A stretch of DNA of 64,000 nucleotides from Macrostomum lignano. Taxonomy: Eukaryota. The notes below the pieces were generated by a model. It had not been told where the DNA came from. It made no database searches and saw only the letters and a program-made list of their open reading frames with translations. The DNA lies in contig NIVC01001860.1 of assembly GCA_002269645.1 (NCBI GenBank), positions 124,001-188,000 of the forward strand, given 5' to 3'. A program made the translations under genes and the position numbers. Below are positions 8,201 to 64,000 of the stretch, piece by piece (position 1 is the first letter of the stretch; each line of letters opens with the position of its first letter).

Positions 8201-11200
8201 TCAGCCTGTTCAGCCATCCCAGCAAGTGCAGCATCAGGGCCGGTGCCTTCTCCTTGAACTCGCGTCTCTTTGCAAGCGGCGGCGAGGACGGCAGCCTCTG
8301 CCTCTGGGATGTGCCCTCCCAGTCTCTGCTCCGCTGCCTCTCCGGTCACTGCGGCTCCGTGCTGGGCCTGGCCTTCAGCCCGGACGGCCGGTTTCTCGTG
8401 TCCGGCGCCGCCAGCGGCGACTTGCGCGTCTGGGACGGACAGTTCGGACGGGCAAAGGCGCTGCAGCTGGTGCTGGACGGGCATGACCTGGGCGTGGCCG
8501 GAGTTGACTTCTCACCCTGCCCTGCCAGTGAGTCTGGTAGAGATTCTGTACAGTCTGGTAGAGATTCTGTACAGTCTGGTAGAGATTCTGTATAGTCTGA
8601 TAGAGATTCTGTACAGCCGGATAGAGATTCGGTACAGTGTCATAGATCTGTACACTGTCATAGATCTGTACACTGTCATAGATCTGTACACTGTCATAGA
8701 TCTGTACACTGTTATAGATCTGTACACTGTCATAGATCTGTACACTGTCATAGATGCCCTGGCTGTCCGTACACTCAATCCAGCAGTCAATTATCTTTCC
8801 GGATCCTGAGGCCGCTAGCCAGAGTTTCATAATTGAGGCATGGGGGATCGGCGAGCCAAATTAAAAAGAGGATTAGAGAGTCCCAGCTCAAAGCTGCCAA
8901 AGAAGCGAAGGGATTAGGCTGACCCTTCTGACCTCTGGAACCTAAAAGAACAATTAAATTAGGCTGATCTTCTTCTTCTAGAAGAGAGGCAAGAGGGACG
9001 GCAAGAATTAGCAGGGCGGGCGTCATGAATCCCAGAGATGTTGCAGCAACGGCAGCCCCTAATCTCCGTTTGCATGCCCGGCAAAGTGCAGAGCGGGGGC
9101 TGCGGCACTGAAGGTTGCAGATTAATTGATGGCGGGCAGGGGAGGCTGCGATGCTGAATGGCGGAGAGATGAAGATGAGGAGATACAGAGTGCCTCAGCG
9201 ATCCTATTTTGCGTCCCATTTCCCAATTATGCGTGTTTCCTCTGCTTTGAAATTCTCTGCTTTTATTAGCTGGCCCTGCTGCTGTTTACCACTGGGGCTC
9301 GTCTTGTCTGGGAACTTTATCTGGGCTGTTTTGGGGCGGTTATAATGCAATGCTTGTCAATAGTAATATATACATTTCCCCCGCTTCCCCACATTCCCAT
9401 CATCCCGATTCCCATCACCCCTTTCCTCACCACCCCATTCCCCATCACCCCATTCCCCATCACCTCATTCTCGATCAACGCATTCTCCATCACCCCATTC
9501 CCCATCACCTCATTCTCCATCACCCCCTTCCTCATCACCCCATTCCCTACCACCCCTTTCCCCATCACCCCATTCCCCACCACCCCCTTCCCCAATCACC
9601 GCATTCCCCATCATCCCATTCCCATTCCCCATCACCTCATTCTCCACCACCCCATTCCCCACCACCCATTCCCCACCACCCCATTCCCCATCACCCCATT
9701 CCCCACCACCCCATTCCCCACCACCCCATTCCCCATCACCCCATTCCCCATCACCCCATTCCCATCACCCCATTCCCCACCACCCCATTCCCCACCACCC
9801 CATTCCCACCACCCCATTCCCCACCACCCCATTCCCCATCACCCCATTCCCCATCACCCCATTCCCCATCACCCCATTCCCCATCACCCCATTCCCATCA
9901 CCCCATTCCCCATCACCCCATTCCCCATCACCCCATTCCCCACCACCTCATTCCCCACCACCCCATTCCCCACCACCCCATTCCCCATCACCCCATTCCC
10001 ATCACCCCATTCCCCATCACCCCATTCCCATCACCCCATTCCCACCACCTCATTCCCCACCACCCATTCCCCACCACCTCATTCCCCACCACCCATTCCC
10101 CACCAACCCATTCCCCATCACCCCATTCCCCATCACCCCATTCCCCACCACCCCATTCCCACCACCCCATCCCCACCACCCCATTCCCCACCACCCCATT
10201 CCCCATCACCCCATTCCCCATCACCCCATTCCCATCACCCCATTCCCATCACCCCATTCCCCATCACCCCATTCCCATCACCCCATTCCCCATCACCCCA
10301 TTCCCCATCACCCCATTCCCCATCACCCCATTCCCCATCACCCCATTCCCATCACCCATTCCCCATCACCCTATTCCCCATCACCCTATTCCCCATCACC
10401 CTATTCCCCATCACCCCATTCCCCATCACCCCATTCCCCACCACCCCATTCCCCATCACCCCATTCCCCATCACCCCATTCCCCACCACCTCATTCCCCA
10501 CCACCCCATTCCCCATCACCCCATTCCCCATCACCCCATTCCCACCACCTCATTCCCCACCACCCCATTCCCCATCACCCATTCCCCACCACCCCATTCC
10601 CCATCACCCCATTCCCCATCACCCCATTCCCCATCACCCATTCCCCATCACCCCATTCCCCATCACCCCATTCCCCATCACCCCATTCCCCATCACCCCA
10701 TTCCCCACCACCTCATTCCCCACCACCCATTCCCCACCACCCCATTCCCCATCACCCCATTCCCCACCACCTCATTACCCACCACCCCATTCCCCACCAC
10801 CCCATTCCCCACCACCCCATTCCCCACCACCCCATTCCCCATCATCTCATCAAGTTTCCTACTGCCCACCTGCTTTCGCTCTTCCGATTTGCATTCCGTC
10901 TCTCAGACAAAATCGCCTCTCAAACCAGCGCCATCCAATAAATTCCTCAATTCCTGTCCACGCCACTCACGCCTCAGATCCGCCTCCCGTTGCCAGGCTC
11001 GCATCCGGAGCCCGGGTCCAGACGCGCCACCGCGCCCTGCTACACTGTGGCCACTGGGGGCAGCGATAATCTAGTGAAAATCTGGCAGCTCATCTGCTTT
11101 GAGGCAGCGTCTGCAACATCTGCTGCTTCTGGCCCCAACGGCGGGGTCAGCAAAGGTCACAGCAGTGAGTTGTAGCCTGTGACTACGGGGAACTTCTGTC

Positions 11201-27885: not shown

Positions 27886-29406
27886 ATGGCTTCTAACCGA
27901 AGTAACAAACCGGCTGTGGATGACACAGTGCCTCCGGCCTCGGCTGGGGCCGTGGACTCCTCGGCCATACCACCTGCTACCATCGGGGACGCCTCGGCGA
28001 GACCCGTGGAGCCAACTCTGAGCGGTGCCTCCGAGAAGACACCTGCTACTCCAGCTGCTAAGAAACGCAGCACCACCTCTGGAGCTGCCCGCCGTCGACT
28101 TAACAAGGCGAGGCGGGCCAAGGAGGGCGGAAGCCAAACCGGTGCCAGGGGCCAACGGCCCGCGGCAGCGGAAGCTTCCCAGTCTGGGGCGGTGGCGGAA
28201 GAGGGCCTCGAGCCCACGGAAGCCCCTGCCCAGGATAGGGAGGCCGATGCAGCCGGGAGGGTGGACAGCCCACCTGAAGAAAGCTCCACTGACCCCCGGG
28301 CCTCCTACGCTGATGCGGCAAAGAGGCAACCGGCGGTTGTCATCCTGGGAAAGGACGCGCGCCTGTCTCCCGATCAGCTGAAGCAGGTGAGAAGTGCCGT
28401 TGATGGCCTCCTGTGGAAGCAAACTCTGAAGGGCACGCCTCTGAACATTCATTCGAATGCGACGAGGGACTCGTGCCTTCTCATTTGGCCCAGTGATGCT
28501 GACTCGGGTCGGCGGCTCCTTGAGCTGCTGCCCGAGCAGAGCTGGGACCTCAACCTAGCCTTCTGCAGAGAGGACGAGCGCCCCCGGACCAAGAGGCATC
28601 GAATCTGGGTCCCGGCCAGGAGCGTTGTTACCTCTGCTGACGAGCTCCGGAAAGGACTGCTAGCAGTCAACCGGGAGCTTCCCGCCGCGGGCCTAGTGGT
28701 GCATGACACCCTTAAGCGCACCGACGGCACTGGCTTCACAGCCATCCTGGGGCTGTCGGACGCCTGGATGAGGCGTTATCCACACGGCAGCTTCATCAAC
28801 GTCGGCCTTTGGAAGCTGCGCATCCGCTCCTACGAGGCCGACCCTCCCCGTGGCAGTGAGCAGGGCGGGCGGGATGCGGAGGCGGCCGGGGCCGAGGCGC
28901 AAGCCTCTGCTCAGACTGCCAAAGCAAACCGCCCTGCCCGGCAGCACGGCCGCGCGGGCAAAGCTCAGCGCGCTGCTGAGGGCGGAGGCGACCGACGCCC
29001 GGCGCGCAGCACCAAGCGGCGCGGCCTGTACCAGCGTGCAGCTGAGGCAGTCCGTACCGCCAAAATCTCCCAGCTGAGGCGAGAGGTCGCCGGGACGCCT
29101 AGGCGCACCAGTTCGTCCAGGGAGGGTGGGGACGTCCCAGCTGGGCCCAACCCCTCGGGGCAGGGCCGACTGGAGACGGACCCGCCTGCCCAGGCGGCTG
29201 GCTGCTCCAGGGCATTGGGCCAATCTGAGGCGGAGGACCCCATGGATGGTGGGCAAAGGGCGGCGAACGCTGCCTACTGCCTTCCGGCCAATCGGGGGCC
29301 TTTTGCTGAAGAAGAGCCCATGGACACCGGCGACCCCGACCCGAAGCCGGTGAGCGCCGAGGAGGAGGAGGAACTCCTGGCGGCTGCAACATCCGATCTG
29401 CAATGA
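27886..29406 (+). CDS. Retrotransposon ORF1 (gag-like; resembles the LOA-type DUF4780 ORF1)
   Basis: Open frame MASNRS... containing SYADAAKR, a basic KKR..RRRLNKARR patch and RIWVP..LLAVNRELP..LGLSD; no CCHC knuckle seen. Confidence 0.8.
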   Translation: MASNRSNKPAVDDTVPPASAGAVDSSAIPPATIGDASARPVEPTLSGASEKTPATPAAKKRSTTSGAARRRLNKARRAKEGGSQTGARGQRPAAAEASQSGAVAEEGLEPTEAPAQDREADAAGRVDSPPEESSTDPRASYADAAKRQPAVVILGKDARLSPDQLKQVRSAVDGLLWKQTLKGTPLNIHSNATRDSCLLIWPSDADSGRRLLELLPEQSWDLNLAFCREDERPRTKRHRIWVPARSVVTSADELRKGLLAVNRELPAAGLVVHDTLKRTDGTGFTAILGLSDAWMRRYPHGSFINVGLWKLRIRSYEADPPRGSEQGGRDAEAAGAEAQASAQTAKANRPARQHGRAGKAQRAAEGGGDRRPARSTKRRGLYQRAAEAVRTAKISQLRREVAGTPRRTSSSREGGDVPAGPNPSGQGRLETDPPAQAAGCSRALGQSEAEDPMDGGQRAANAAYCLPANRGPFAEEEPMDTGDPDPKPVSAEEEEELLAAATSDLQ

Positions 29407-32400
29407 TGCCAGCGACTACCTGGTGTCTGCAGATCAACACCCAGCACTGCGTGGCGGCGTCGGTCAACCTGATGCGCACGGCAGAGCAACAGCTTCCGGG
29501 CCTGGTCTTCGTACAGGAGCCCTGGATGACTAAAGGTAAGCCAAATAATGTGCCATCTGGCTACCACTGTTTTTGCATGGTGGGCTCTCAGCCTCGCCCA
29601 AGATCTTGGTCTTTGCTGCAAAAGCTTTTGAGGCATGGATGAGACCTGATCTCTCGACTGGGGACATCTGTGTTGTTCAAATCAATAACCTCATTCCCAA
29701 TAAACCTGTGCTGGTAGCTTCTGCCTATTTCCCGGGCGATGCCCCAGTTGCCTGCGACGCGTTAGTCAACCTTACTGACTATGCTGCGTCCCATCGGTTC
29801 GAGCTGCTCATTGCAGGGGATGTGAACGCACACCACCTGCATTGGGGCAGCAAGAACATCAATAGCAGAGGCGAGGAGCTGCTGGCCTATGTCAGCAGCA
29901 CTAACCTCAACTTCTGTAACGTGGGCAATGCACCAACGTTCAATAATGGGCGGTGGGCCGAAGTCATCGACACCACCATCGCCTCACCCGGACTGCTTTC
30001 CGCAGTTACGGGCTGGCGAGTGTGGGACGAGGACTCGCTCTCGGACCACCGCTTTATCCGCTTTTGCATTGGGCCGACCAAGCAAAAGCCTAAGGTCACT
30101 TGGAGTCGGAACGTCAGGAACACCGATTGGGCCGCCTTTGGCTCGAAGCTGAGCCGCGGCCTTCGGGATCTTGACCCCCCCAGTGACCTCTCTGACTGCC
30201 AGGTGGTGGACGATCTCGCCTCCTCCCTGGGCGGGGCGATCACCACTGCCTTTGAAGCAGCCTGCCCCCTAAAGGCCTATAAAGGCAAGAAATCTGCTCC
30301 CTGGTGGAACCCAGAGCTCGGGGCCCTTCGGCGCCGAGCCAGGACCCTCCAAAGGCGAGCGCTCAAAACCAAAGACCCATCTGACAGAGAGGCCTATACC
30401 CGTGCGATCCACGAGTTTAAGGGCCAAGTCAGAAGGGCCAAGACGGCCAAGTGGCGCCAATATTGCGAAGGGCTTGAGGGCTCTCGCCCCGTAGCCCGCG
30501 TGGTTAAGGCACTCACTAATGACCGTTTTTCTAAACTCTCTGTTGTGAAGAGACCTGACGGCTCGGTCACAGAGAGTTCGGAAGAGACTCTAGAGCTCAT
30601 GCTCAACAGTTTTTTCCCTAAATCTCCGACTCAGCAGGGCCCGCCCGACCACACAGTGGGAGGGCAAGGCCTAGCAAAGTCTATGATCACCAAAGACCGC
30701 ATTATTAGAGCGGCAAGGTCCTTTAACCCGTTCAAGGCGCCTGGGCCCGACGGCATCTACCCAGCGTTCTTGCACGAGGCGGTGAAAAACCACCGCTTCC
30801 TGGACCTGCTCTGTCGTCTCCTTCGAGCTTGTGTGGAGCTGGGCTATGTACCAGTTGCATGGAGAGAGGCCCGGGTGGTCTTTATCCCCAAGCCTGGAAA
30901 GAGCGACTACCAATCGGTGAAGGCCTTCAGGCCTATCAGCCTCACTTCTTTCTGCCTCAAGCTCCTCGAGAGACTGGTGCTTTGGCGCCTACTTTCGGTC
31001 GAGCTGAAGCGCTTCCCACTCTCGCAGAACCAGCACGCCTTCCGCGCGGGCAGGTCAACCGAGAGTGCTCTCCATGTCATTGTTGACTTCCTGGAGAGGC
31101 CGTTCTTGGCAGCGGCTTTGCCCTCTCGCTTTTCCTGGACATTGAGGGGGCCTTCGACAACGTCATCTTCGAGGCCTTTTGCAGAGCCCTGGAATCCAGG
31201 GCCACGCACCCTCACCTTGTCCGGTGGATCATGTTCATGATCCGAAACCGCACTGTTGTGGCCCACCTGAGCGGCAGCTCTCTTTCGGTGCCTGTCCTGA
31301 AAGGGGGCCCCCAGGGCGGCGTTCTCACCCCCGTTCTCTGGAACATGGTCATGGATGAGTTGCTTTGCAGTGATCTCCACGACCCCATTCTCAAGGTGGG
31401 CTATGCCGATGATGTGACCGCGATATGCGCGGGCCCCTCGGTTGATACCATCAGAGACCTTCTGCAGGGCTTTCTGGGACGAGCGGAGCGTTGGGCAGAC
31501 CAATGTGGCCTTAGACTCTCAGAGTCGAAAACCACAGCAGTCATGTTTACCAACAAACTGCTCTGGACCATTAAGCCCCTCACCCTCTATGGAAAGAATA
31601 TTTCCATGGAGAAGCAGGTCCGCTGCCTGGGCCTCACTCTGGACCACAGGCTTAACTGGACTCCGCACATTCAAACTAAAGCCAAAAAAGCCCTGGCTGT
31701 ACTGGCTCAGATCAGGCGCGCCGTGGGCACCACCTGGGGGCTCACCCCCAGGAAGCTGTGGTGGATTTACACTGCCATCATCCGCCCCTCGATCAGTTAC
31801 GCCAGCCTCGTGTGGGCTAGCGGCCTGAGCGTCAAGAGCAACCTCGACGCTCTCTACAAAATCCAGGGCAGAGCCTGCCGCATGACTATGGGCGCTCCAC
31901 CCTCTACTCCTTTTGAAGGCATGAATGCCTTCCTCTGTGCCCCTCCTTTGGATATTTATATCAAAGGAGAGGCGGCGAAGAGCACCCGGCGTCTTCTGGA
32001 TGCTGGGGTGGCCTTCAAGAAAGTGCGGGCCTTTAAGAAGCGGTCGCTTATCCCGCACTCTGACCTCTGCCTCAAGGCTCTCGAGGAGTGTGGCGGGCTC
32101 AACATCCTCACGGACTCGATCCCAGCCACCCTTCTCCTGAGCCAAAGGTATAAGGTCACCATTCAGCCTCGACACGAGGCGAGTGACAGCTGGAGCGACT
32201 CTGAAGTCCACTGTTACACTGACGGCTCTATGAGGCATGGTCTTTCAGGCTTCGGAGCTTGCGTCTTCTTCAAGGGAGAAGTGGTGTGGAGCTACTCCCA
32301 GCACACTGGGCTCAACTCCAGTGTTTTTCAGAGCGAGGTGCTTGCCATCAGCTCCTGCGCGGCAGAGCTGCGCCGAAGGCAGCTTAGCGGCCGGAAATTT

Positions 32401-33105
32401 ATTTTTCACTCTGACAGCCAAGCAGCCCTTCGGGCCCTCTGCCGCAGCACCGCCAGCTCCAGGTCCGTCCTGGACTGCAACACCCAGCTCAACGGGCTTG
32501 CGCTAGGCAACCAGGTGGAGCTCAGATGGATCCCGGGCCACGCCGGCTTCCTCGGCAACGAGCGCGCTGACCTGCTGGCCAAGGCTGGCTCCGCCGGCGC
32601 GCTATTGGGGCCGGGCCCGGGTGCCCCCATCCCCGCCTCGGTGATCAATTCCCGCGTTAAGCGCTGGGCTGACTCCGAGCATCTCCGCAGGTGGCACGAC
32701 ACCCGGAATTGTAGGCAATCCCGTGCTGCCGTCCCCTGTCCCTCTCCTCTCCTGCGTAGAGCCCTCCTCAGGCTCAACCGCAGAGACCTCAGAGCAGTTA
32801 GCATGGCCCTCTCCGGGCATGGCTGCTTCTCTCGCCACCGCTTCCTTCAGGGCCAAGTACCCGAGGAGCGGTGCCCCTTCTGCCGCTCAGGCAGTGAAAA
32901 CGCCGAGCATTTTATCTGCCACTGCCCGGTTTTCACCAGGGCCAGGCTTACTCACCTCGGGCCAAACCCGGTTCTCTCCGACGTTTGCAGGCCCGAGAGC
33001 ATCCCGCTGCTCGCCCGGTACCTCAGGGACACCGGACGAGCTGATTTCTTCCCCACCGTCGGTGAGGAGGACCGCGCTGCAGGCGAGACCGACGGGTCCC
33101 CCTGA
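29403..33105 (+). CDS. Retrotransposon ORF2 (APE endonuclease, reverse transcriptase, RNase H, C-terminal CxxC..H..C), split by two 1-bp deletions (~29597, ~31098)
   Basis: APE: LQIN..H, QEPW, SAY, GDVNAHH..WGS, SDH. RT: PGPDGI, KPGK..YRPISL-type, FLDIEGAFDNV (after frame repair), PQGGVL, GYADD. RNase H: YTDGS, SDSQAAL, WIPGHAG..GNERAD. Zinc finger: CPFCRSGSENAEHFICHC. Confidence 0.95.
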
Positions 33106-35005: not shown

Positions 35006-38000
35006 ATGACAGAAATTTTATGTGACTGGCTCAACAAGAGCCTAGAAGTCTCTATTCCTATCAGTAAGTGACAAGCTGCTCTTACGAGCGTATTTTAGAA
35101 ATCTTAAAATTTTTGTACAAGCAACGGAAAAAATAATAAAAAGGTCTCAATGTTTTAATGTTTCACATTTTTAATTCATTGCAGCAATTTTTAGGCTCAT
35201 CAGACATAGCCACTTTAAACATAACTTCCTGAATAGATTTGTCTTATTTTGTCATGGGTGTTGCCTTTCTTTCATCCTTGTAATTTATACAAACAGTCTA
35301 AAGAATTTCACAATAAAATATGGTTACAAATATTTTAGCATTGATTATTCGATTTAACAGTTAAATGTGAAAGAATCCTTTAGGATTTGGTACAATTACG
35401 AACTAAAATATTATGCGAATAGTCGTATACTTAAAAAAATTCGAAAAAGAGAAGGCATACCAAGTAGAACTTCTCTCTCAGATTAGCATTAAGACTTTAT
35501 TTAATAGATATTCTTTGCTTTAACAGTTTTATAAAATAAAAATAATTATAAAATATGTATTATCATTTTTTATAATTAAATAAATGTAAGAGCCTATAAA
35601 AATAACAAAATAGTAGCAATATAGCATAGTTTGTAGATATATGGTTTAACTCATTGTATAAATTTACTAAAAAGACAAATATTATTTAACTTTTCCCATA
35701 CCATTCTACACTTGCCCAGATCCTGAGAATTTCGAAAAGGAATTCGCCAACGGCTATCTGATCGGAGAGGTGCTGCACAAATACGAGCTCCAGGATGACT
35801 TTGACCGATTCTCCAAGTCCAAGTGAGAATTTGATTTAAATCTGAATTGACATCTTCATGTACTCAGAATAGTATGAAAACAACTTAGTTTAAATCTATC
35901 AAAGCGAACATCACGATATTATTTTTTAGATTCTTCCAAAATGTACTAACTTATGTACGAGCTAGGTCTAAATAGCAGAACAGAGTCATCTATTTGCATT
36001 TAAACAGCATCAAACACGAAACAATTAAATATACTACTTCAAGTAGTTCAATATGACATTTAAAAGTCGCAAAACAGAAAACTGCAACAAAATCCGTCCC
36101 AACTTCGTAGGGTGTCCGAGTCAAAAATCAATAATTTCACCCGAATCGAGCCCGTGCTGCATCTGCTCGGAGTGCCCTTCGACACCAGCACCGCCCGAGA
36201 CATCATGACCGAGGAACCGGGCACCGCCACCCGCCTCATGTACCAGATCTTCATCGCGCTGGAGAACAAGAAGAAGGCCAACCTGACCGGCGTTGCCATG
36301 GAGACCATGCGGCCGGCTGCGCCTGCCAAGCTGCAGAGCATGGAGTCGCTGATTTACCGGCAGCGGCTCAAGCAGGTGACCCCGAGGCAGACTGACCTCA
36401 ACCTGCAGGAGCTCATCGACAGGTTCCATCAGCATCAGGTGAGGCGCCTCTCTTCTTCACTACCTTCCTATCAAGAACAACTTCAGTGGAAGGCTGGGAA
36501 AGTTCATTTCTTTGAAAATCTTTGAAAACCTTCTGAGAAGTTTCACCTGTCCGTCTCTTAACAGGTGCGGCTGGAGGAGCGCGCGCTCAAAGGTCGAATC
36601 GAAAGCGCCGAGGCGCACAGGAGGGACAACCAGGACAGGCGGCAGAAGCAGCTGGACCGCAGCAAGCAGGTGCAGCTCATGCAGGCCGAGCAGATGGCCA
36701 AAATTCAGTGAGTCAGGCCAGCCCCTCAGACTCACTAAGGTCTCGTACATGCTGTCACAAGTCGAAAGAAAGAGAAAAGAGAAACCTCCTGAAGACAAGC
36801 TCACAAGCAGAATCTCATTGATACATAAATAATACATTCACTCAAAGACACCTTACTTAGAGACCCACACAAGGACACCCCGCAAAGACACCAGGCAGAA
36901 GCTACAAGGAAGACACCCCGTAAAGACACCCCGCAGACACCCTACAAAGACACCCCGCAAAGACGCCCCGCAAGGACACCCCGCAAGGACACCAGGTAGA
37001 AGCTACAAGGAGGACACCCCGTAAAGACACCCCGCAAAGACATCCCACAGACACCCCGTAAAGACACCCCGCAAAGACACCCCGCAAAGACACCCCGCAA
37101 AGACATCCCGCAAAGATACCCCGCAAAGACACCCCGCAAAGACACCCCGCAAAGACACCCCGCAAAGAAATCCCGCAAAGATACCCCGCAAAGACACCCC
37201 GCAAAGACACCCCACAGACACCCCACAAAGACACCCCGCAAAGAAAACCCATAAACTCCCGCCCCGCCGTCCCCGCCCGCAGAGCGGCCATCGTGCACAT
37301 CCCGAAGCCGCCGCCGAACCACACCGCGGCGGCCATGGATCACCGCCGGCAGCAGCGCCGTCGACAGGAGGCCGCCGCCGCCATGCAGGCCCTGGACGGC
37401 TTCGAGGAGCGCCTGAGCCGCACCCTGCAGCCGACGGGTGACTCCGGCGCGGCCGGTCCCGACCGTCCGGACTCCTCGGCCAGCGGCACCAGCGAGGATT
37501 TCGAGCAGCCGACAGGGCAGCAGCGAGGAGCGGCGACGCTGCAGCCGCTGCAACAGGCGGCCACCAGCGACCCCACCGACTACATCAAGCCCGCCTCCAA
37601 CGACGCGTACATCGCCAAAATACGGCGCCGCCTAGCCGAGGACGCCGAGGCGCGGGCGGCGCGCGAACGGCGCCGACGAAAAGTTTTGGTGGACTGCCTT
37701 CGGGCTCACGAGCAGCAGGAGGAGCTTCAGCGGGAGGCCAGCCTTGCCGGCAAGCTGATGCGCCAGTCGCAGCTCGAGCGCCGTATCGCCGTCCAGCTGC
37801 TGCAGGCGCGCCGCGAGAAAGACGTCCTAAAGCGGAACCGGCGCGAGCGGGAGCGCCAGTATCAGGAGCGGCGCGAGGCCGAATTTCAGGAAGCGCTCGA
37901 CAGAGAGAAAGCCCTGGCTGAGAGGGCGCGGGCCGAGTACGAGGTGAGGGTTCGGTCTCACCCGCCTCTCGTGTGTCTCACCCGCCTCTCGTGTGTCTCA

Positions 38001-41000
38001 CCCGCCTCTCGTGTGTCTCACCCGCCTCTCGTGTGTCTCACCCGCCTCTCGTGTGTCTCACCCGCCTCTCGTGTGTCTCACCCGCCTCTCGTGTGTCTCA
38101 CCCGCCTCTCGTGTGTCTCACCCGCCTCTCGTGTGTCTCACCCGCCTCTCGTGTGTCTCACCCGCCTCTCGTGTGTCTCACCCGCCTCTCGTGTGTCTCA
38201 CCCGCCTCTCGTGTGTCTCACCCGCCTCTCGTGTGTCTCACCCGCCTCTCGTGTGTCTCACCCGCCTCTCGTGTGTCTCACCCGCCTCTCGTGTGTCTCA
38301 CCCGCCTCTCGTGTGTCTCACCCGCCTCTCGTGTGTCTCACCCGCCTCTCGTGTGTCTCACCCGCCTCTCGTGTGTCTCACCCGCCTCTCGTGTGTCTCA
38401 CCCGCCTCTCGTGTGTCTCACCCGCCTCTCGTGTGTCTCACCCGCCTCTCGTGTGTCTCACCCGCCTCTCGTGTGTCTCACCCGCCTCTCGTGTGTCTCA
38501 CCCGCCTCCCCTGTGTCTCCCTGCCTCCCCTGTGTCTCCCTGCCTCCCCTGTGTCTCCCCGCCTCCCCTTTGTCTCCCTGCCTCCCCTTTGTCTCCCTGC
38601 CTCCCCTGTGTCTCCCTGCCTCCCCTGTGTCTCCCTGCCTCCCCTGTATCTCCCTGCCTCCCCTGTATCTCCCTGCCTCCCCTGTGTCTCCCCGCCTCCC
38701 CTGTATCTCCCTACCTCCCCTGTGTCTCCCTGCCTCCCCTGTGTCTCCCTGACTCCCCTGTATCTCCCTGCCTCCCCTGTGTCTCCCTGCCTCCCCTGTG
38801 TCTCCCCGCCTCCCGTTTGTCTCCCTGCCTCCCCTGTGTCTCCCTGCCTCCCCTGTGTCTCCCTGCCTCCCCTGTATCTCCCTGCCTCCCCTGTATCTCC
38901 CTGCCTCCCCTGTGTCTCCCTGCCTCCCCTGCATCCCCTGTATCTCCCTGCCTCCCCTGTGTCTCCCTGCCTCCCCTGTGTCTCCCTGCCTCCCCTGTGT
39001 CTCCCTGCCTCCCCTGCATCCCCTGTATCTCCCCGCCTCCCCAGCTGCAGCTGGAATCTCCATCATTCCCGCCCGCAGGAGGAGTTCCAACAGGAGCGGC
39101 TACTTCGCGAGGAGGCGGCCAAACAGCGCCGCCAGCGGCAGTGGGAGCGCCGCTACGGCCACTGCTGGCTGGCTGTGTCCGACCTGGTGGACGTGGCCTG
39201 CCGGGTGGCCGAGCTGCGCGAACTTGAAGGCCCCGGCGGCCGGGTGCCGCACCGGAAGTACCGTGACCTCAAGGCCCTGTTCACCAGCGGCCAGCCGGTC
39301 TACCCGGTAGCCGGCGGGCCGGCGGCGCCGCAGGCGGCTTTGGCCATAGACGATCTGGAAGCGCCAGACGGAGCCGAGCCGATGGAAACTGATGCCGATC
39401 CCAACCTGGTCCTTGAGGAGAAGGAAGCTGTGCAGGATGAAGCCGAGCTGTTGGAGTACAAGGAAATGCAGGGCGAGTGGCAGCCGCCCGAGGACTGCGA
39501 GATGCAGTCGGCGCCGGTGTCAAACCCGGTGGTCGGCTGGATCGTCGACCGGGTGCACGCCATCGCCAACCCGCCAACGGTGAGTTGCGTTGCTGAATAA
39601 AATGAATTGGGATGCTCCTAACTGGCTACTTTTAGTAATATCAATCTGCAGAATTTTCTGATCTTTCTCGCCCTGGATTTCAGCCGCCGCCGGAAGCGCC
39701 GCAGTTTCCGCCGTTCCCAGTGCGAGCGGCCATCTGCGGCAAGCTGTTCTCGGGCAAGTCCAGCGTCATCCGGCGCCTCATCGAGAGTGAGTGAAGCTGC
39801 GCTTTGCAGCCTGGCTGCTGGGTTGCTGTAGTGCGAGATTCCGGGTGGAATGAGACCCCAGATAGGGTGAGATTCCGTATAGGGTGAGATTCCGGATAGG
39901 GTGAGATTCCGTATAGGGTGAGATTCCGGATAGGGTGAGATTCCGTATAGGGTGAGATTCCGGATAGGGTGAGATTCCGTATAGGGTGAGATTCCAGATA
40001 GGGTGAGATTCCGGATAGGAAGAGATTCCGAGTGGAATGAGGCCCCAGATAAGGTGAGATTCCAGATAGGGTGAGATTTCGGATAGGGTGAGAACCTGGA
40101 TAGGGTGAGGTTTTGGATGGGGTGAGAACCTGGATAGGGTGAGATTTCGGATAGGGTGAGATTTCGGATAGGGTGAGATTTCGGATAGGGTGAGTACCTG
40201 GATAGGGTGAGATTTCTGATAGGGTGAGATTTCGGATAGGGTGAGATTTCGGATAGGGTGAGATTTCGGATAGGGTGAGATTTCGGATAGGGTGAGATTT
40301 CGGATAGGGTGAGATTTCGGATAGGGTGAGAACCTGGATAGGGTGAGATTTCGGATAGGGTGAGATTTCGGATAGGGTGAGATTTCGGATAGGGTGAGAT
40401 TTCGGATAGGGTGAGATTTCGGATAGGGTGAGATTTCGGATAGGGTGAGATTTCGGATAGGGTGAGATTTCGGATAGGGTGAGATTTCGGATAGGGTGAG
40501 ATTTCGGATAGGGTGAGAACCTGGATAGGGTGAGATTTCGGATAGGGTGAGAACCTGGATAGGGTGAGATTTCGGATAGGGTGAGAACCTGGATAGGGTG
40601 AGATTTCGGATAGGGTGAGATTTCGGATAGGGTGAGATTTCGGATAGGGTGAGATTTCGGATTGGGTGAGATTTCGGATTGGGTGAGATTTCGGATAGGG
40701 TGAGATTTCGGATAGGGTGAGATTTCGGATAGGGTGAGATTTCGGATAGGGTGAGAACCTGGATAGGGTGAGATTTCGGATAGGGTAAGATTTCGGATAG
40801 GACGAGATTTTGAATAGGAAGAGGTTCCGGGTAAGGTGGATAGGTTGAGATTTCGGACAAGATAAGATTTATAAACCTGTTGCTAAGATAGAGCTGAGAT
40901 AGAGTTGAGATAGGGCTGAGATAGAGCTGAGATAGATCTGAGATAGAGCTGAGATAGAGCTGAGATAGAGCTGAGATAGAGCTGAGGTAAAGTTGAGCTA

Positions 41001-55481: not shown

Positions 55482-57309
55482 TCAGTCAATTCGAGTTTCC
55501 ATGACCTGCCCGGATGTCACCGAAGATGCGGATACTTCAGCGGCGGCGGCGGCGGCGCTGGAGGTTCCGGCGAGGATACCGACACTCGCGGCTCCGGAGG
55601 AGGAGGACAGCGGCTCCTCGGAGCGGTTGAAGGTCGTCAGGCCGACAGTGGGCGAGCCCGTGTCACCGTCAGGACCACCGAGCAGCGGCTGCAGAGGTGT
55701 GGGCAGCTGGTGAATACTTTGCTCCTACCACTCCTTTCAATCCGGAATCTGCCCCCTTCAATCCGAAATACGCCCCTTCAATCCGAAATCCGCCCCCTTC
55801 AATCCGAAATCCGCCCTCTTCAATCTGAAATCTGCCCCCTTCAATCCGAAATCCGCCCCCTTCAATCCGAAATCCGCTCCCTTCAATCCGAAATCCGCTC
55901 CCTTCAATCCGAAATCCGCTCCCTTCAATCCGAAATCCGCTCCTTTGAATCCGAAATCCGCTCCTTTGAATCCGAAATCCACTCCCTTCAATCCGAAATC
56001 CGCTCCCTTCAATCCGAAATCCGCCTCCTTCAATCCGAAATCCGCTCCCTTCAATCCGAAATCCGCTCCCTTCAATCCGAAATCCGCCCCCTTCAATCCG
56101 AAATCCGCTTCCTTCAATCCGAAATCCGCTTCCTTCAATCCGAAATCCGCCCCATCCATGCCTCACCTGTCTGTGGTGATTGTTATTGTCGGCATGGCGC
56201 CGGCGCCCGCCGCCCCCCACGTCGTCGGCGTTTCGCGCCGCCCCGGCGCCGACATTTGCCCCGTCGGCGTCTTCAGCGTCGGCAACGGGAGCCCTGAGCT
56301 GCCCGATGTCCATGAGGTCGCGCATGGCGGAGCGAAACGGGCCGCTGAGGAAGGCGTAGAGAATTGGATTGCCGGCGCTGCTGGCGTAGGTCAGCAGGGA
56401 GGTCACGTGCGAGCTGACGATGGTCAAGTAGGTGATCGGTGCCTCGGTGGCCAGGCTGACATTCACGTGCACCCAGTACGGCAGCGAGCAGCCCAGATAG
56501 AAAATCACCACGGCAACCACCAGCAGGGTGGCCTTGCCCAGCCGGTCCTGCGATTGCGTGCTGGCCGCCGCGCTTGAGCTCTGAACCGCTTCGCCGCCGC
56601 CGTTCCGTTGAGCCCTCTTGGCCAGGTACAGGCGGTAGGCGATAAGCGAGTAGAACAGGCACAGCAGGAGGCCGGGCAGAACGCAGCCGGTCACGAACAT
56701 GTAGCGCATGAAGTAGGCCGGGTGTGAGAAGAATTTGTACACAGGACTGGCCGGCCGTGAGGCCTCGTCCGAGTCAGCGTCGGATCTGGTGTCATTGAGC
56801 CGATCGTCCGAGAAGGCATCCGGCGATGTGTGCGTGCAGTGCGGCACGGTGTCGTTGAAGTACTCCACCCTGGCGCACAGGTAGGTCGGGCTGATGACCA
56901 GGGCGCCCATCAGCCAGATGGCGGCGAGGACAACGCTGGCGAAGGCTCGGGTCCTCAGTCTGGCCGACGGCGAGACCATCGCCTTGTAGCGATCGAAGCT
57001 CATGGCGGTGATGATGTAGATTGACACTGTCCAGTTGGTGTAGTTCAGCATGTAGTACACCTTGCACAGCAGCCAGCCCCAGTTCCATTGGCCCACGATG
57101 CTGGTGTACATCAGCGGAGGAATTGACAGCAGGTGAAGGCTGTCAGCCAGCGCCAGGTGCATCAGGTACAGGCTGGTCACGGAACGGCTGCTGTGCTGCT
57201 GTCGGCAGATGACGCCCATCACCAGGCAGTTCCCGACGATGCCAACAGCGAAGATCGCAGCCAGGACCGAGTTGTAGAGGATCACCGCGATGAGAGACAG
57301 GCTCTGCAT
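55482..57309 (-). CDS. Class A peptide GPCR, somatostatin/allatostatin-C/opioid-receptor-like
   Basis: Exons 56167-57309 and 55482-55706 (phase-0 intron). Seven TM segments with GIVGN, LALAD, WNWGWLLCK, SFDRY, CSLPYW and NPILY. The N-terminus may continue in an upstream exon (acceptor just before the ATG). Confidence 0.9.
55738..56155. repeat. Intronic minisatellite, unit TTCAATCCGAAATCCGCTCCC (21 bp)
   Basis: Fills the GPCR intron. Confidence 0.95.
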
Positions 57310-58929: not shown

Positions 58930-60660
58930 GTTTAAGTAAAGCTCGAACTGATTTAAGTAAAGCTCGAACTGACTAAAGTCAACTAAACTAAACTCGATCC
59001 GACTCAACTCAAACTCGAACTGAATCAAGTGAAACTCGAACTGAATCAAGTGAAACTCGAACTGACTCAATTCAAACTCGAACTGACTCAACTCAAACTC
59101 GAACTGAATCAAGTGAAACTCGAACTGACTCAAGTGAAACTCGAACTGACTCAAGTGAAACTCGAACTGACTCAAGTGAAACTCGAACTGAATCAAGTGA
59201 AACTCGAACTGAATCAAGTGAAACTCGAACTGACTCAATTCAAACTCGAACTGACTCAACTCAAACTCGAACTGAATCAAGTGAAACTCGAACTGACTCA
59301 AGTGAAACTCGAACTGACTCAAGTGAAACTCGAACTGACTCAAGTGAAACTCGAACTGACTCAATTCAAACTCGAACTGACTCAATTCAAACTCGAACTG
59401 ACTCAACTCAAACTCGAACTGAATCAAGTGAAACTCGAACTGACTCAAGTGAAACTCGAACTGACTCAAGTGAAACTCGAACTGACTCAAGTGAAACTCG
59501 AACTGACTCAAGTGAAACTCGAACTGACTCAACTCAAACTCGAACTGACTCAATTCAAACTCGAACTGACTCAACTCAAACTCGAACTGAATCAAGTGAA
59601 ACTCGAACTGACTCAAGTGAAACTCGAACTGACTCAAGTGAAACTCGAACTGACTCAAGTGAAACTCGAACTGACTCAATTCAAACTCGAACTGAATCAA
59701 GTGAAACTCGAACTGAATCAAGTGAAACTCGAACTGACTCAATTCAAACTCGAACTGACTCAACTCAAACTCGAACTGAATCAAGTGAAACTCGAACTGA
59801 CTCAAGTGAAACTCGAACTGACTCAAGTGAAACTCGAACTGACTCAAGTGAAACTCGAACTGACTCAATTCAAACTCGAACTGAATCAAGTGAAACTCGA
59901 ACTGAATCAAGTGAAACTCGAACTGACTCAATTCAAACTCGAACTGACTCAACTCAAACTCGAACTGAATCAAGTGAAACTCGAACTGACTCAAGTGAAA
60001 CTCGAACTGACTCAAGTGAAACTCGAACTGACTCAATTCAAACTCGAACTGAATCAAGTGAAACTCGAACTGAATCAAGTGAAACTCGAACTGACTCAAT
60101 TCAAACTCGAACTGACTCAACTCAAACTCGAACTGAATCAAGTGAAACTCGAACTGACTCAAGTGAAACTCGAACTGAATCAAGTGAAACTCGAACTGAA
60201 TCAAGTGAAACTCGAACTGAATCAAGTGAAACTCGAACTGACTCAAGTGAAACTCGAACTGACTCAAGTGAAACTCGAACTGAATCAAGTGAAACTCGAA
60301 CTGAATCAAGTGAAACTCGAACTGACTCAAGTGAAACTCGAACTGACTCAAGTGAAACTCGAACTGAATCAAGTGAAACTCGAACTGAATCAAGTGAAAC
60401 TCGAACTGAATCAAGTGAAACTCGAACTGAATCAAGTGAAACTCGAACTGAATCAAGTGAAACTCGAACTGAATCAAGTAAAACTCGAACTGACTCAAGT
60501 GAAACTCGAACTGAATCAAGTGAAACTCGAACTGACTCAAGTGAAACTCGAACTGAATCAAGTGAAACTCGAACTGACTCAAGTGAAACTCGAACTGAAT
60601 CAAGTGAAACTCGAACTGAATCAAATGAAACTCGAACTGAATCAAGTGAAACTCGAACAG
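58930..60660. repeat. Minisatellite, unit AAACTCGAACTGA(C/A)TCAA(GTG/TTC/CTC) (21 bp)
   Basis: About 1.7 kb with ordered variant blocks. Confidence 0.95.
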
Positions 60661-61054
60661 ACCCAAAACCTCGAAGTACTTCATGCCATTTCGGAATGAA
60701 AAAGTCACTTTAAAACAATTCAAAAAGATGATTATAACGAACAAGTATCGCTGTTCAAGCTCGGTCTAAATAGAAATGGTTATTTCTGCTTTGCTAAAAT
60801 TTACTTCAACATGTTACAGGTCTCAAGGAAGCAAAGCATGCATCATTTTTACTATACTACTTATAACTCGTAGAGGCAGTAATATGCAGAGTTAGCAGCC
60901 AAAGAAGACGGTGAGAAAGCATTGACAGCATCAGCACCTCTTGCAGTCGAACAAATTCAAATAAAACCATGAAGACTGAACAGGAAAACTAAGAAAATGT
61001 AAAATGCAAACTCAAAAAACGCATTTCAAGTCACCCAGCACACCAGGGCAAACC

Positions 61055-63723
61055 CTAGGATGAGCCGGCCCCGGCCGACAGCTGCTGGTTGACAGACTCC
61101 AGGCGTTTCAACACGGAACCGTAGCTGAACTTGGCCTGGCCTGGGTTGAACGGGTCTCGCATCGGCTTGCCGTCTCGGTTGATGTGGCGCCTGCACAGGT
61201 CTGTGTAGTACTGGTAGTGCTGCCCGAAAGCGTTGCGCATCTCCTGGAGGGACAGGGCAGTTCGGTGTGAGTCAAGATCCCAATCCCTGATCCCATTCTG
61301 AAATCCCAATCCCTGATCCCATGCTAAAATCCCAATCCCTGACCCCATGCTGAAATCCCAATCCCTGACCCCATGCTGAAATCCCAATCCCTGACCCCAT
61401 GCTGAAATCCCAATCCCTGACCCCATGCTGAAATCCCAATCCCTGACCCCATGCTGAAATCCCAATCCATGATACCATTCTGAAATCCCAATCCCTGACC
61501 CCATGCTGAAATCCCAATCCCTGACCCCATGCTGAAATCCCAATCCATGATACCATTCTGAAATTCCAATCCCTGATCCAATGCTGAAACCCCAATCCCT
61601 GGTCCCATTCTGAAATCCCAATCCCTGACCCCACACTGAAATCCCAATCCCTGACCCCATGCTGAAATCCCAATCCCTGATCCCATTCTGAAATCCCAAT
61701 CCCTGACCCCATGCTGAAATCCCAATCCCTGACCCCATGCTGAAATCCCAATCCCTGACCCCATGCTGAAATCCCAATCCCTGACCCCATGCTGAAATCC
61801 CAATCTCTGACCCCATGCTGAAATCCCAATCCCTGACCCCATGCTGAAATCCCAATCTCTGATCCCATGCTGAAATCCCAATCCCTGACCCCATGCTGAA
61901 ATCCATGACGCCAACCGGAGAGACGGCTCAGCGTGCTTGGCTACGCCGATGACCTCGCCCTGCTGTCCTCGACCGTCGAGGGCGCCCAACGACAGCTGGA
62001 TAGGCTGGTTGCCGTTGCGGCGAGCGTCGGCCTGGTGGTCAACACGCAGAAGACCGTTGTGCTCTGCGTGCCGGACGACATCGAGACTACAATCTTCTGC
62101 CGAGGCGCTGACGGACAGGCGAGTGAGCTTCCAAGATGTCAGCAGTTCGTCTACCTTGGCGGTCTGGTTCCCAACGTCCGCGAGGATCTGCGGCTTCGCC
62201 GAGGACTTGCCTGGGCTGCCTTTCGTTCTATAAGGTCAGTCCTGCAGTCCGAGGCCCTACCGGACCGCCAGAGGGCGGCGCTGTTCCAGGCGGTGATCGA
62301 GACCGTCCTGTTATACAACGCCGAGACCTGGACGCTGACAGACTCGCTCGAGGCTCAAGTCGACGCGGCACACGCTGGCCTGCTGCGCGCCGCCTTCAAG
62401 ATCGGCAACGAGCGAGTCACCAACACGGCGCTCTATCATCGCGCCGGCCTGGCCCGTCCTAGCGATCTGCTGCGCCGTCGGCGACTCCAGCTGGCAGGCC
62501 ACGTCATCCGCGCCGAGGCCTACTGTCCGGAGCCGGTGCAGGAGGTGCTGCTACTTACGTTGCAGGCACCCTACCGGCGGGGACAGGCGAGGACTCGGCG
62601 CTACATCGACTGTCTGCTGGCTGACGCCGGCGCCCCGGACTCTGCCGGCGGTGCGGCCTTTGTTCGCGCCCAAGCTTCGAAGCGCGCCATCTGACGCTGC
62701 TTTTGCGAACTGGCAGCGTACTCTGTTGTTGTTTGAAATCCCAATCCCTGACCCCATGCTGAAATCCCAATCCATGATACCATTCTGAAATCCCAATCCC
62801 TGATCCCATGCTGAAACCCCAATCACTGACCCCACTCTGAAATCCCAATCCCTGATCCCATGCTGAAACCCTAATCACTGACCCCATGCTGAAATCCCAA
62901 TCCCTGACCCCATGATGAAATCCCAATCCCTGACCCCATGCTGAAACCCCAATCCCTGACCCCATGATGAAATCCCAATCCCTGACTCCATGATGAAATC
63001 CCAATCCCTGACCCCATGCTGAAATCCCAATCCATGATACCATTCTGAAATCCCATCCCTGACCCTATTGCAGCGCATGGCTTAAGTACGCCAGACGCCT
63101 ACACAACCTGCGCCACGCTGTGAAATGACTTACCTATGAAAGAAACTCTAAAGCAAAATTAACGCAGTTTTGGGTAAACGGCAGGAGTAACTATGACTGT
63201 CTTATCAAGCCTAAATGCCTCGGCATCTAATTAGTACCGCGCCGCGCCGTACTAATCGCCGCGCGCCGTACGCGCCGCGCCGCGCCGTATTAGATCCGCG
63301 CCGGACGCCGTCCGCCAAAATGCCCATGCGCTGCAATCAGGATCCCTGATCCCACTCTGAAATCCCAATCCCTGATTCCATGCTGAAACCCTAATCACTG
63401 ATCCCGTTCTGAAACCCCCATCCCGGAATGCCATCAGCCACCTGTCTGAGCAACTGCGGCATGGGCACCCGGCCTTCCATCATCTCGCAGACGGCCACGC
63501 GAAGAGTCTCATGCTGCACAATGTCGTTATACTCGTCGCACTTCTTGACGCTGGCGCTAGCGAAGCCGGGCTCGTTTCGGTAGGGCTTTTCGTTCATCAG
63601 CGACTGCACAGAGAGCAGGACGGAGCGGAGGCCCATAGCCGGCGTCCAGCAGGGGCCCACCCAGGTGCCCAAGATGCTCAGGCAAACTTTGCCGTTCTTG
63701 TACAGGTTCGGGTTGAAGCGCAC
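61055..63723 (-). CDS. UBE2Z: Ubiquitin-conjugating enzyme E2 Z (last two coding exons; 5' part lies beyond the window)
   Basis: Exon 63442-63723 [47 protein letters not shown] (catalytic Cys). Exon 61055-61243 [27 protein letters not shown]; phase 0. Confidence 0.93.
61905..62733 (+). mobile_element. 5'-truncated RTE-type non-LTR retrotransposon
   Basis: ORF to 62694: [43 protein letters not shown]. (GTT)3 tail; 8-bp TSD TGAAATCC at 61897-61904 and 62734-62741. Confidence 0.92.
63063..63341. mobile_element. 279-bp MITE-like element with TIRs and an 8-bp TSD, containing a degenerate 28S rRNA fragment
   Basis: Perfect inverted 14-mer ATTGCAGCGCATGG (63067-63080) / CCATGCGCTGCAAT (63324-63337), extendable to an imperfect 18-bp TIR. 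ATCCCTGA is duplicated at 63055-63062 and 63342-63349. Confidence 0.75.
63172..63241 (+). pseudogene. Degenerate 28S rRNA fragment (helix 69 region, R2/I-PpoI site)
   Basis: GGGTAAACGGCAGGAGTAACTATGACTGTCTTATCAAGCCTAAATGCCTCGGCATCTAATTAGT aligns to the conserved eukaryotic 28S GGGTAAACGGCGGGAGTAACTATGACTCTCTTAAGGTAGCCAAATGCCTCGTCATCTAATTAGT. Confidence 0.9.
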
Positions 63724-63884
63724 CTGTGCGACGGAGTACAGGTGTTTCAACAGTGTTACAAAAAAAATTCCAGAAGCTCAGGAACCTACCGGAAATTTGC
63801 ATAAACTTTCCGGGGAACTCGAAGCTTGAAGATGATTAAATTCAGAGATCATGAAACTTGAGGCTATGAACTGTGGGATCGAAT

Positions 63885-64000
63885 GAGTTTGGGGATCATT
63901 AATATCAGGGATTAATGAGTTTGGGTCATTAATGTCAGGGATTAATGAGTTTGGGTCATTAATGTCAGGGATTAATGAGTTTTGGATCATTAATGTCAGG
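63885..64000. repeat. Tandem repeat TCATTAATGTCAGGGATTAATGAGTTTGGG (~30 bp), truncated by the window end
   Basis: About 3-4 copies; probably in a UBE2Z intron. Confidence 0.8.

What the first reader, a model, noticed from the sequence alone, without database searches (positions are those of the whole stretch)
63055..63349. TIR-bounded mini-transposon carrying the 28S rDNA R2/homing-endonuclease target, scarred at the cut site
Seen: a 279-bp insert in the UBE2Z intronic minisatellite with a 14-bp perfect (18-bp imperfect) TIR, an 8-bp TSD, GC-rich subterminal repeats (TACGGCGCGGCGCGG-like, x3 on the minus strand) and about 70 bp of 28S rRNA (63172-63241). The fragment has only scattered substitutions except at TTAAGGTAGCC, which reads TTATCAAGCCT. 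Known: this site is targeted by R2 retrotransposons, the I-PpoI/I-CeuI homing endonucleases and the Daphnia DNA transposon Pokey. Inference: this could be a non-autonomous DNA transposon family that captured its rDNA target (an rDNA-specific transposon lineage or its excision footprint), or a dispersed decoy/binding site for R2-type proteins. I do not recognise a described MITE with this cargo.
Basis: partly seen in the sequence, partly recalled or inferred. Interest (0 to 1): 0.85.

Follow-up and report, generated by a model that had tools for sequence, protein, structure and literature searches.

The report
Mini-transposon carrying a 28S rDNA fragment
A 279-bp inverted-repeat-bounded insertion in an intron of a flatworm (Macrostomum lignano) UBE2Z-like gene carries about 70 bp of 28S ribosomal DNA centred on the site that R2 retrotransposons cut, with that cut site mutated; only this one copy could be examined, so whether the cargo matters is unknown.

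Summary
A 279-bp segment (63063-63341) interrupts a 26-bp minisatellite inside a GT..AG intron of a UBE2Z-like gene. It has a perfect 14-bp terminal inverted repeat (16/18 over 18 bp). It is flanked by ATCCCTGA on both sides, and removing it plus one flank copy restores the minisatellite phase. Rfam confirms a eukaryotic 28S match (E=3e-7). Only the 71-nt core 63172-63242 is independently supported. Of its 12 mismatches to the consensus, 7 lie in 8 nt at the R2/I-PpoI site (P about 2e-4). The host is Macrostomum lignano: a LINE in the window is 100% identical to an M. lignano protein model.

Best reading: a MITE-like non-autonomous DNA transposon with an 8-bp duplication, superfamily unassigned, whose interior includes a captured 28S fragment.

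One oddity stands. The fragment spans -36 to +35 around the R2 nick. It keeps 12/13 of the motif R2Bm uses to bind, but carries two changes that cripple or abolish R2Bm nicking.

The family-level claims (multi-copy, shared scar, autonomous partner, rDNA targeting, decoy) could not be tested. No other copy was found in the window or in any searchable collection, and none of those collections searches M. lignano genomic DNA. Interest is moderate, and a whole-genome BLAST would settle it.

The parts
63055..63062 (.). Left copy of the putative 8-bp target-site duplication, ATCCCTGA
   Evidence: Read. Phase analysis and empty-site reconstruction.
63063..63080 (+). Left terminal inverted repeat, CCCTATTGCAGCGCATGG (perfect 14-nt core 63067-63080)
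   Evidence: pair I1, 14 nt, 100% complementary. The extension to 16/18 is read.
63081..63171 (+). Left internal region of unknown origin. 63130-63171 is AT-rich and was included in the Rfam 28S alignment, but is not independently significant.
63172..63242 (+). 28S rRNA gene-derived core in sense orientation. It spans -36 to +35 relative to the R2 bottom-strand nick. The last 6 nt overlap the first GC-rich repeat.
   Evidence: RF02543, E=3e-7. (59/71 identical to the Rfam consensus).
63174..63186 (+). Equivalent of the R2Bm upstream recognition motif (RUM, -34 to -22): GTAAACGGCAGGA, 12/13 identical to 28S (G-25 to A)
   Evidence: Alignment. Motif definition from PMC10499050.
63202..63212 (+). 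Altered R2/I-PpoI/Pokey site. 28S TTAAGGTAGCC reads TTATCAAGCCT. 7 of the core's 12 mismatches lie in 63205-63212. The R2 nick position would fall between 63207 and 63208.
   Evidence: P about 1.7e-4. The gapped alignment replaces AGGT with TCA and adds one T.
63230..63256 (.). Near-perfect palindrome (13-nt arms, 1-nt loop). Its left arm is the 3' end of the 28S fragment and its right arm starts the GC-rich repeats.
   Evidence: pair I2, 92% complementary.
63236..63312 (-). GC-rich, CpG-rich subterminal repeats (TACGGCGCGG core on the minus strand; period about 19)
   Evidence: (D3, D4).
63324..63341 (-). Right terminal inverted repeat (reverse complement CCTGATTGCAGCGCATGG)
   Evidence: I1.
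63342..63349 (.). Right copy of the putative 8-bp target-site duplication, ATCCCTGA
61244..63441 (-). Host intron of the UBE2Z-like gene (GT..AG). It consists almost entirely of the 26-bp minisatellite plus two insertions: a LINE fragment at 61905-62733 and this element.

Best explanation
This is one insertion of a miniature, non-coding, cut-and-paste (class II, TIR) DNA transposon in Macrostomum lignano. A transposase supplied in trans recognised the 18-bp ends, and probably the GC-rich subterminal repeats. It inserted the element into the intronic minisatellite with an 8-bp staggered cut, which produced the ATCCCTGA duplication.

The interior is a mosaic. Its 64-71 nt 28S-derived segment was most likely picked up from the multicopy rDNA by template switching during gap repair of a progenitor element. 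The palindrome and tandem GC repeats at its 3' junction are the kind of rearrangement such repair leaves.

The R2/I-PpoI site inside the fragment was then destroyed by a small complex mutation. This was either a chance event or error-prone repair after an rDNA-site endonuclease cut the copy. The copy now sits inertly in an intron, antisense to the gene.

Shown: the insertion structure, the TIR, the duplication in phase, the 28S origin, and the mismatch cluster. Inferred: transposase mobilisation, the capture mechanism, the origin of the scar, and inertness.
For: - The perfect 14-nt TIR lies exactly at the edges of the segment that interrupts the minisatellite. It is the only non-trivial perfect 14-nt inverted pair in 64 kb.
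- The 8-bp duplication restores the repeat phase when removed.
- No ORF exceeds 44 codons within the element (a 60-codon ORF starts in the flanking minisatellite), and a 41-aa element ORF has no relative among 1.84 billion representative proteins.
- 28S origin: Rfam E=3e-7, 59/71 identity to the consensus.
- A palindrome and 19-nt tandem repeats abut the 3' end of the 28S piece.
- TEs carrying rDNA-derived pieces have precedent: Pokey carries IGS/ITS2 repeats, SINE28 carries 28S, and some fish R2 carry a 28S-like 3' UTR.
- The same minisatellite also took up a 5'-truncated LINE, so it tolerates insertions.
Against: - Only one copy was seen and no autonomous partner, so membership of a family is assumed, not shown.
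- The TSD 8-mer is part of every minisatellite unit, so the duplication rests on phase rather than on a unique sequence.
- The termini (CCCTA.../CCTGA...) lack the YARNG motif usual for hAT elements (own knowledge), so no superfamily can be named.
- Incidental capture does not explain two things. The fragment is roughly centred on the R2 site and starts 2 nt before the R2Bm upstream motif. Most of its changes fall at the nick site (PMC10499050). A random 71-nt piece of a roughly 4-kb 28S gene would include that site only about 2% of the time. That estimate is mine and post hoc.
Confidence: 0.6

Rival explanations
1. The scar is an endonuclease scar. An active R2 (or a homing endonuclease, or another element specific for this site) cut either the rDNA unit that donated the fragment or the dispersed MITE-borne copy itself. 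Error-prone end joining replaced AGGT with TCA at the nick. The site became uncuttable, which ended the cut-and-repair cycle. The cargo has no function; the scar records an attack.
For: - The gapped alignment places a 4-nt deletion plus 3-nt insertion exactly across the R2 nick (TTAAGG|T), with one extra T 4 nt downstream.
- The changes include A-3 to T and T+1 to A. In R2Bm the first severely reduces nicking and the second abolishes it (PMC10499050).
- R2 lineages exist in Platyhelminthes (PMC5035012).
Against: - No R2 or other element specific for this site has been shown in M. lignano. Nothing turned up in the literature searches and no rDNA unit could be fetched.
- R2 makes a nick first and usually ends in insertion rather than in a small indel.
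- A single complex mutation anywhere would look similar.
Confidence: 0.2
2. The 28S module is a selected part of a MITE family. One version: it is a nick-resistant binding site (decoy or sponge) for an R2-type protein. The other: it is a relic of an rDNA-specific DNA transposon lineage that carries a mimic of its own target.
For: - The fragment spans -36 to +35 around the nick, close to the R2Bm contact range of -38 to +21.
- The RUM equivalent is 12/13 intact at the correct ungapped distance, while the RASIN is changed at 4 of 7 positions.
- Outside the site the core is 58/63 identical to 28S, while the 42 nt upstream show no significant 28S similarity.
Against: - One copy gives no evidence of conservation.
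- The recognition rules come from a silk-moth D-clade R2 and may not apply to flatworm R2.
- The element is inserted in an intron minisatellite, not in rDNA.
- The 8-bp TSD target ATCCCTGA bears no resemblance to the 28S site.
- No transposase was found.
Confidence: 0.12
3. It is not a transposon. A piece of filler DNA containing an rDNA fragment was patched into a double-strand break in the minisatellite, and the terminal inverted repeat arose by chance or by snap-back synthesis.
For: - Single copy, and no transposase partner found.
- Internal palindrome and tandem repeats show that local template switching did occur.
Against: - A perfect 14-nt (16/18) inverted repeat exactly at both ends, plus an in-phase 8-bp duplication, is the signature of transposase-mediated insertion.
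- Only one other perfect 14-nt inverted pair exists in 64 kb, and it is low complexity.
Confidence: 0.08

Closest known systems
MITEs / non-autonomous TIR DNA transposons with 8-bp duplications (hAT, P, Merlin, MULE, Zisupton and Novosib-type; own knowledge)
   Same: Small size (279 bp), no coding capacity, terminal inverted repeats, subterminal short repeats, 8-bp flanking duplication.
   Different: The termini do not show the hAT YARNG motif. No autonomous relative or further copy has been seen. The interior carries a 28S fragment.
Pokey / mPok (piggyBac) of Daphnia (PMC3849761, PMC4912750)
   Same: A DNA transposon family with MITE derivatives that is tied to the same 28S site and carries rDNA-derived sequence inside the element.
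   Different: Pokey duplicates TTAA, inserts in the 28S TTAA itself, and carries IGS/ITS2 repeats, not the 28S target. The element here has an 8-bp duplication, unrelated termini, and sits in an intron.
SINE28 and other rRNA-derived TE modules (review PMC10946416)
   Same: A 28S-derived segment inside a mobile element.
   Different: SINE28 is a retroposed SINE without TIRs. The review's table of rDNA-derived TE sequences lists no MITE carrying the R2-site region of 28S.
R2 retrotransposons, and fish R2 with a 28S-like 3' UTR (PMC5035012; PMC10499050)
   Same: They involve the same 28S positions. Some R2 carry a copy of 28S sequence near their target.
   Different: R2 are non-LTR retrotransposons with no TIRs, they insert by TPRT into rDNA, and they encode RT and an endonuclease. 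Here there is no RT, no R2 UTR or ribozyme, and the site is not occupied.

Membership tests
MITE (non-autonomous class II TIR transposon) | Terminal inverted repeats at the exact ends of the inserted segment | tested here: met
   14/14. 16/18 with extension. Rare in the window.
MITE (non-autonomous class II TIR transposon) | Target-site duplication of fixed length flanking the TIRs | tested here: met
   ATCCCTGA on both sides. Removal restores the minisatellite phase. Caveat: the 8-mer is part of the repeat unit.
MITE (non-autonomous class II TIR transposon) | Short, with no transposase coding capacity | tested here: met
   279 bp. Longest ORFs within the element are 41-44 codons (a 60-codon ORF starts in the flank). 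No relatives of the 41-aa ORF.
MITE (non-autonomous class II TIR transposon) | Multiple dispersed copies in the genome | not testable with these tools
   Single copy in the window and none in 63 kb of M. lignano loci. No tool searches the M. lignano genome. Other collections were negative.
MITE (non-autonomous class II TIR transposon) | An autonomous element sharing the termini | not testable with these tools
   No transposase domain in ten large window ORFs scanned against Pfam, and no other TIR match.
hAT superfamily | 8-bp TSD | tested here: met
hAT superfamily | Terminal 5'-YARNG motif (own knowledge of the superfamily) | tested here: not met
   The termini read CCCTA and CCTGA.
Pokey / piggyBac | TTAA target duplication | tested here: not met
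   The flanks are ATCCCTGA, with no TTAA at either junction. Pokey features from PMC3849761.
R2 retrotransposon or R2-derived non-autonomous element | Insertion at the 28S site by TPRT, R2 UTR/ribozyme sequence, no TIRs | tested here: not met
   The element is in an intron and is bounded by TIRs. Rfam found no ribozyme or other RNA family apart from the LSU fragment.
28S rRNA gene (functional or pseudogene unit) | Reaches the Rfam LSU_rRNA_eukarya gathering score, with contiguous gene sequence | tested here: not met
   34.7 bits against a gathering score of 50. Only about 71 nt are supported.
R2 target site (RUM + RASIN as defined for R2Bm) | RUM at -34..-22, and RASIN T-6 T-5 N A-3 N N T+1 at the right distance | tested here: not met
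   RUM 12/13 at the correct ungapped distance. The RASIN reads TTATCAA, so A-3 and T+1 are both lost (PMC10499050).

The most novel reading that the evidence does not exclude
M. lignano harbours a MITE family whose conserved cargo is the R2-protein footprint of 28S rDNA (-36 to about +30), with an intact upstream recognition motif but a nick-proof insertion site. On this reading it would be either a dispersed non-cleavable binding site that titrates an R2-type protein, or the remnant of a second rDNA-specific DNA transposon lineage after Pokey.
Probability: 0.1. Interest if true: 0.8.

Novelty: new member of a known kind. Interest (0 to 1): 0.4.

Why it matters
The accessible literature gives Pokey as the only rDNA-specific DNA transposon (PMC3849761), and no element is known to carry a copy of the R2 target. 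If the 28S block proves to be a conserved feature of a multi-copy family, it would link a DNA transposon to the most studied site-specific retrotransposon target. It would also give a natural 'binds but cannot be nicked' substrate, which is relevant to current R2-based gene-insertion work.

If it is a lone chimeric MITE, it is an ordinary example of transposons picking up abundant host DNA. In that case it matters only for repeat annotation of a very repeat-rich flatworm genome.

Tried and rejected
Searches for further copies:
- blastn of the element at word size 7 against the window found only minisatellite flanks.
- The TIR 14-mer with up to 3 mismatches gave no excess over shuffles.
- The same blastn against three M. 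lignano loci found nothing.
- Metagenome scans with the scar 20-mer and with a TIR-gap-TIR pattern gave 0 hits.
- The GTDB scan gave two 19-nt chance hits with no flanking similarity.
- IMG/VR scans gave 0 hits.
- Translating element ORFs to catch spuriously called genes from other copies failed. Exact look-ups found nothing, and phmmer against 1.84 billion representatives gave 0 hits.

Attempts to reach the same or homeologous M. lignano locus for an empty site:
- Exact look-ups of 20 window ORFs, the GPCR and P0125 all failed.
- P0121 proved to be a 47%-identical paralogue whose loci share no repeats with the window.

Rejected readings:
- The 5' extension of the 28S match to 63130 is not significant alone.
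- A hAT-type or piggyBac-type excision footprint does not fit. The change is length-neutral and there is no retained duplication.
- A Tc1/mariner-style TA footprint would need an extra 6-nt deletion.
- The Rfam miRNA and snoRNA hits near 60 kb and 62.96 kb are minisatellite artefacts.

Full report
**Where the window comes from.** The sequence is eukaryotic and rich in repeats. A LINE ORF at 31231-33102 is 100% identical over 66% of its length to the Macrostomum lignano UniRef model A0A1I8IXZ7, and 90-96% identical to other M. lignano models. Residues 187-789 of that model map at 100% identity to 29433-32706 in three blocks. An intronless rhodopsin-type GPCR at 55672-57309 (minus strand) has an M. 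lignano protein as its only strong relative (47% identity). The window is therefore M. lignano genomic DNA. That genome is reported to be more than half repetitive, with 15% simple and tandem repeats (PMC5730564).

**Local context.** On the minus strand, 63442-63732 and 61057-61243 encode a continuous UBE2Z-like C-terminal region. They are joined across a GT..AG intron at 61244-63441. The intron is almost entirely a 26-bp minisatellite (TRF) that has been interrupted twice. One interruption is a 5'-truncated non-LTR reverse-transcriptase fragment at 61905-62733. The other is the element under study.

**The observation.**
- TIR. The arms 63067-63080 and 63324-63337 are 14/14 complementary. Four more bases on each side give 16/18. 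In the whole 64-kb window only two perfect 14-nt inverted pairs have a 50-1000 nt spacer, and the other lies in GCN low-complexity DNA.
- TSD. The 279-bp segment 63063-63341 is flanked by ATCCCTGA on both sides. This 8-mer is in every minisatellite unit, so identity alone proves little. The phase is informative, however. The left flank ends on ...ATCCCTGA and the right flank restarts at ATCCCTGA, instead of continuing with (C/T)CCCATGC. Joining the left flank plus one copy to the right flank gives an uninterrupted array, with one unit 1 nt short.
- Subterminal repeats. The right arm is 71% G+C with 22 CpG. It holds TACGGCGCGGCGCGG exactly twice on the minus strand, and the 10-nt core three times plus one degenerate copy.
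- Coding capacity. No ORF within the element exceeds 44 codons.

**The 28S fragment.** When given only 63130-63270, Rfam's eukaryotic LSU model matches 63130-63242 to model positions 2205-2314. The score is 34.7 bits and E=3e-7, below the gathering score of 50. The 4-kb scan had missed it. The first 42 nt of that alignment are no better than shuffled sequence (P about 0.33; 18% of random window 50-mers score as high). The supported fragment is therefore 63172-63242, and its last 6 nt overlap the first GC repeat. It is 59/71 identical to the consensus. Seven of the twelve mismatches lie in the 8 nt 63205-63212, where TTAAGGTAGCC reads TTATCAAGCCT. Under uniform placement of mismatches this clustering has P about 1.7e-4. 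A gapped alignment replaces AGGT with TCA and adds one T after AGCC, so the net length is unchanged.

**Relation to the R2 target.** The R2Bm structure paper (PMC10499050) numbers the target from the bottom-strand nick in TTAAGG|T.
- The protein contacts -38 to +21.
- Sequence-specific recognition uses an upstream motif (RUM, -34 to -22) and the insertion site (RASIN, -6 to +1, consensus TTNANNT).
- T+1 to A abolishes nicking, and A-3 changes severely reduce it.

Mapped on the element, the nick would lie between 63207 and 63208. The fragment spans -36 to +35. The RUM equivalent 63174-63186 is 12/13 intact (G-25 to A), at the correct ungapped distance. The RASIN reads TTATCAA, so it has lost both A-3 and T+1. 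By the silk-moth rules this is a site that could be bound but not nicked. Whether flatworm R2 proteins follow those rules is unknown. R2 lineages exist in Platyhelminthes, including non-site-specific ones (PMC5035012), but I found nothing about Macrostomum.

**What it most likely is.** The combination is the signature of a transposase-mediated insertion of a non-autonomous class II element: exact terminal inverted repeats, subterminal repeats, an in-phase 8-bp duplication, small size and no coding capacity.
- Superfamily. The 8-bp duplication is compatible with hAT, P, Merlin, MULE, Zisupton or Novosib-type elements (own knowledge). The termini CCCTA/CCTGA lack the usual hAT motif, so I leave the superfamily open.
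- Origin of the cargo. The 28S piece is best explained as captured host DNA. rDNA is a very abundant template. The 3' junction of the fragment is a 13-nt-arm palindrome followed by 19-nt tandem repeats, which is typical debris of template switching during gap repair. TEs carrying rDNA-derived modules have precedent (review PMC10946416; Pokey IGS/ITS2 repeats; fish R2 with a 28S-like 3' UTR).

**What that explanation leaves open.**
- A random 71-nt piece of 28S would rarely contain this site, begin 2 nt before the RUM, and have most of its changes at the nick. These are post-hoc observations on one copy, but they keep two other readings alive.
- The modest reading is that the site was cut by an rDNA-site endonuclease and mis-repaired until it was uncuttable. 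The cut could have been in the donor rDNA unit or in the dispersed copy.
- The ambitious reading is that the block is a selected module of a family, either a decoy for an R2-type protein or a relic of an rDNA-specific DNA transposon.
- The insertion site itself (ATCCCTGA in a minisatellite) bears no resemblance to the 28S site. This argues against current rDNA targeting.

**What could not be done.**
- The element is unique in the window and absent from three fetched M. lignano loci.
- It is absent from JGI metagenomes, GTDB genomes apart from two chance 19-mers, and IMG/VR.
- Its ORFs have no exact or remote match in the protein collections.
- Attempts to fetch the same or homeologous locus through exact protein look-ups failed.
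- The TIR sequence does not occur in the searchable literature.
- None of this bears on copy number in the M. lignano genome.

**Verdict.** The claims about family, targeting, footprint and decoy are untested. I file it as a new member of a known kind (a MITE with captured host rDNA) and give it moderate interest. A single genome-wide BLAST would either make it ordinary or make it a notable new link between DNA transposons and the R2 target.

Noticed in passing
window 61905-62733 (+): A 5'-truncated non-LTR retrotransposon fragment (reverse-transcriptase C-terminal part with a YADD motif, ending in (TGT)n) is inserted in the same 26-bp minisatellite. TGAAATCC occurs on both sides (61897-61904 and 62734-62741), which looks like an 8-bp duplication.
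   Followed up: partly
window 27886-33105 (+): A near full-length LINE (ORF1-like, APE endonuclease, RT, RNase H) is split over three frames. The M. lignano UniRef gene model A0A1I8IXZ7 maps at 100% identity to 29433-32706, so that 'gene' is a transposon-derived model.
   Followed up: partly
window 55672-57309 (-): An intronless 546-aa rhodopsin-family GPCR whose C-terminal tail contains an in-frame 21-bp tandem repeat (56000-56150). Its closest relative is an M. lignano paralogue (47% identity) present on three contigs of assembly Mlig_3_7.
   Followed up: partly
window 58990-60666; 63882-64000; 1381-2826; 9345-11074: Very large minisatellites: 21 bp x 80 copies at 94% identity, and a 30-bp array running off the window end. 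There are also long low-complexity stretches that create 480-570 codon pseudo-ORFs. Weak Rfam hits to MIR6440, mir-929 and sR14 in these arrays are repeat artefacts.
   Followed up: partly
window 37293-39227 (+): A long ORF with a CPC1/SPEF2 D5 domain (Pfam E=4e-20), probably a large exon of a sperm-flagellar-protein-2-like gene.
   Followed up: no
window 63243-63341: The right arm of the element has 22 CpG in 99 nt (71% G+C). This extreme CpG density shows no sign of deamination decay. It suggests either a young element or no CpG methylation in this genome.
   Followed up: no
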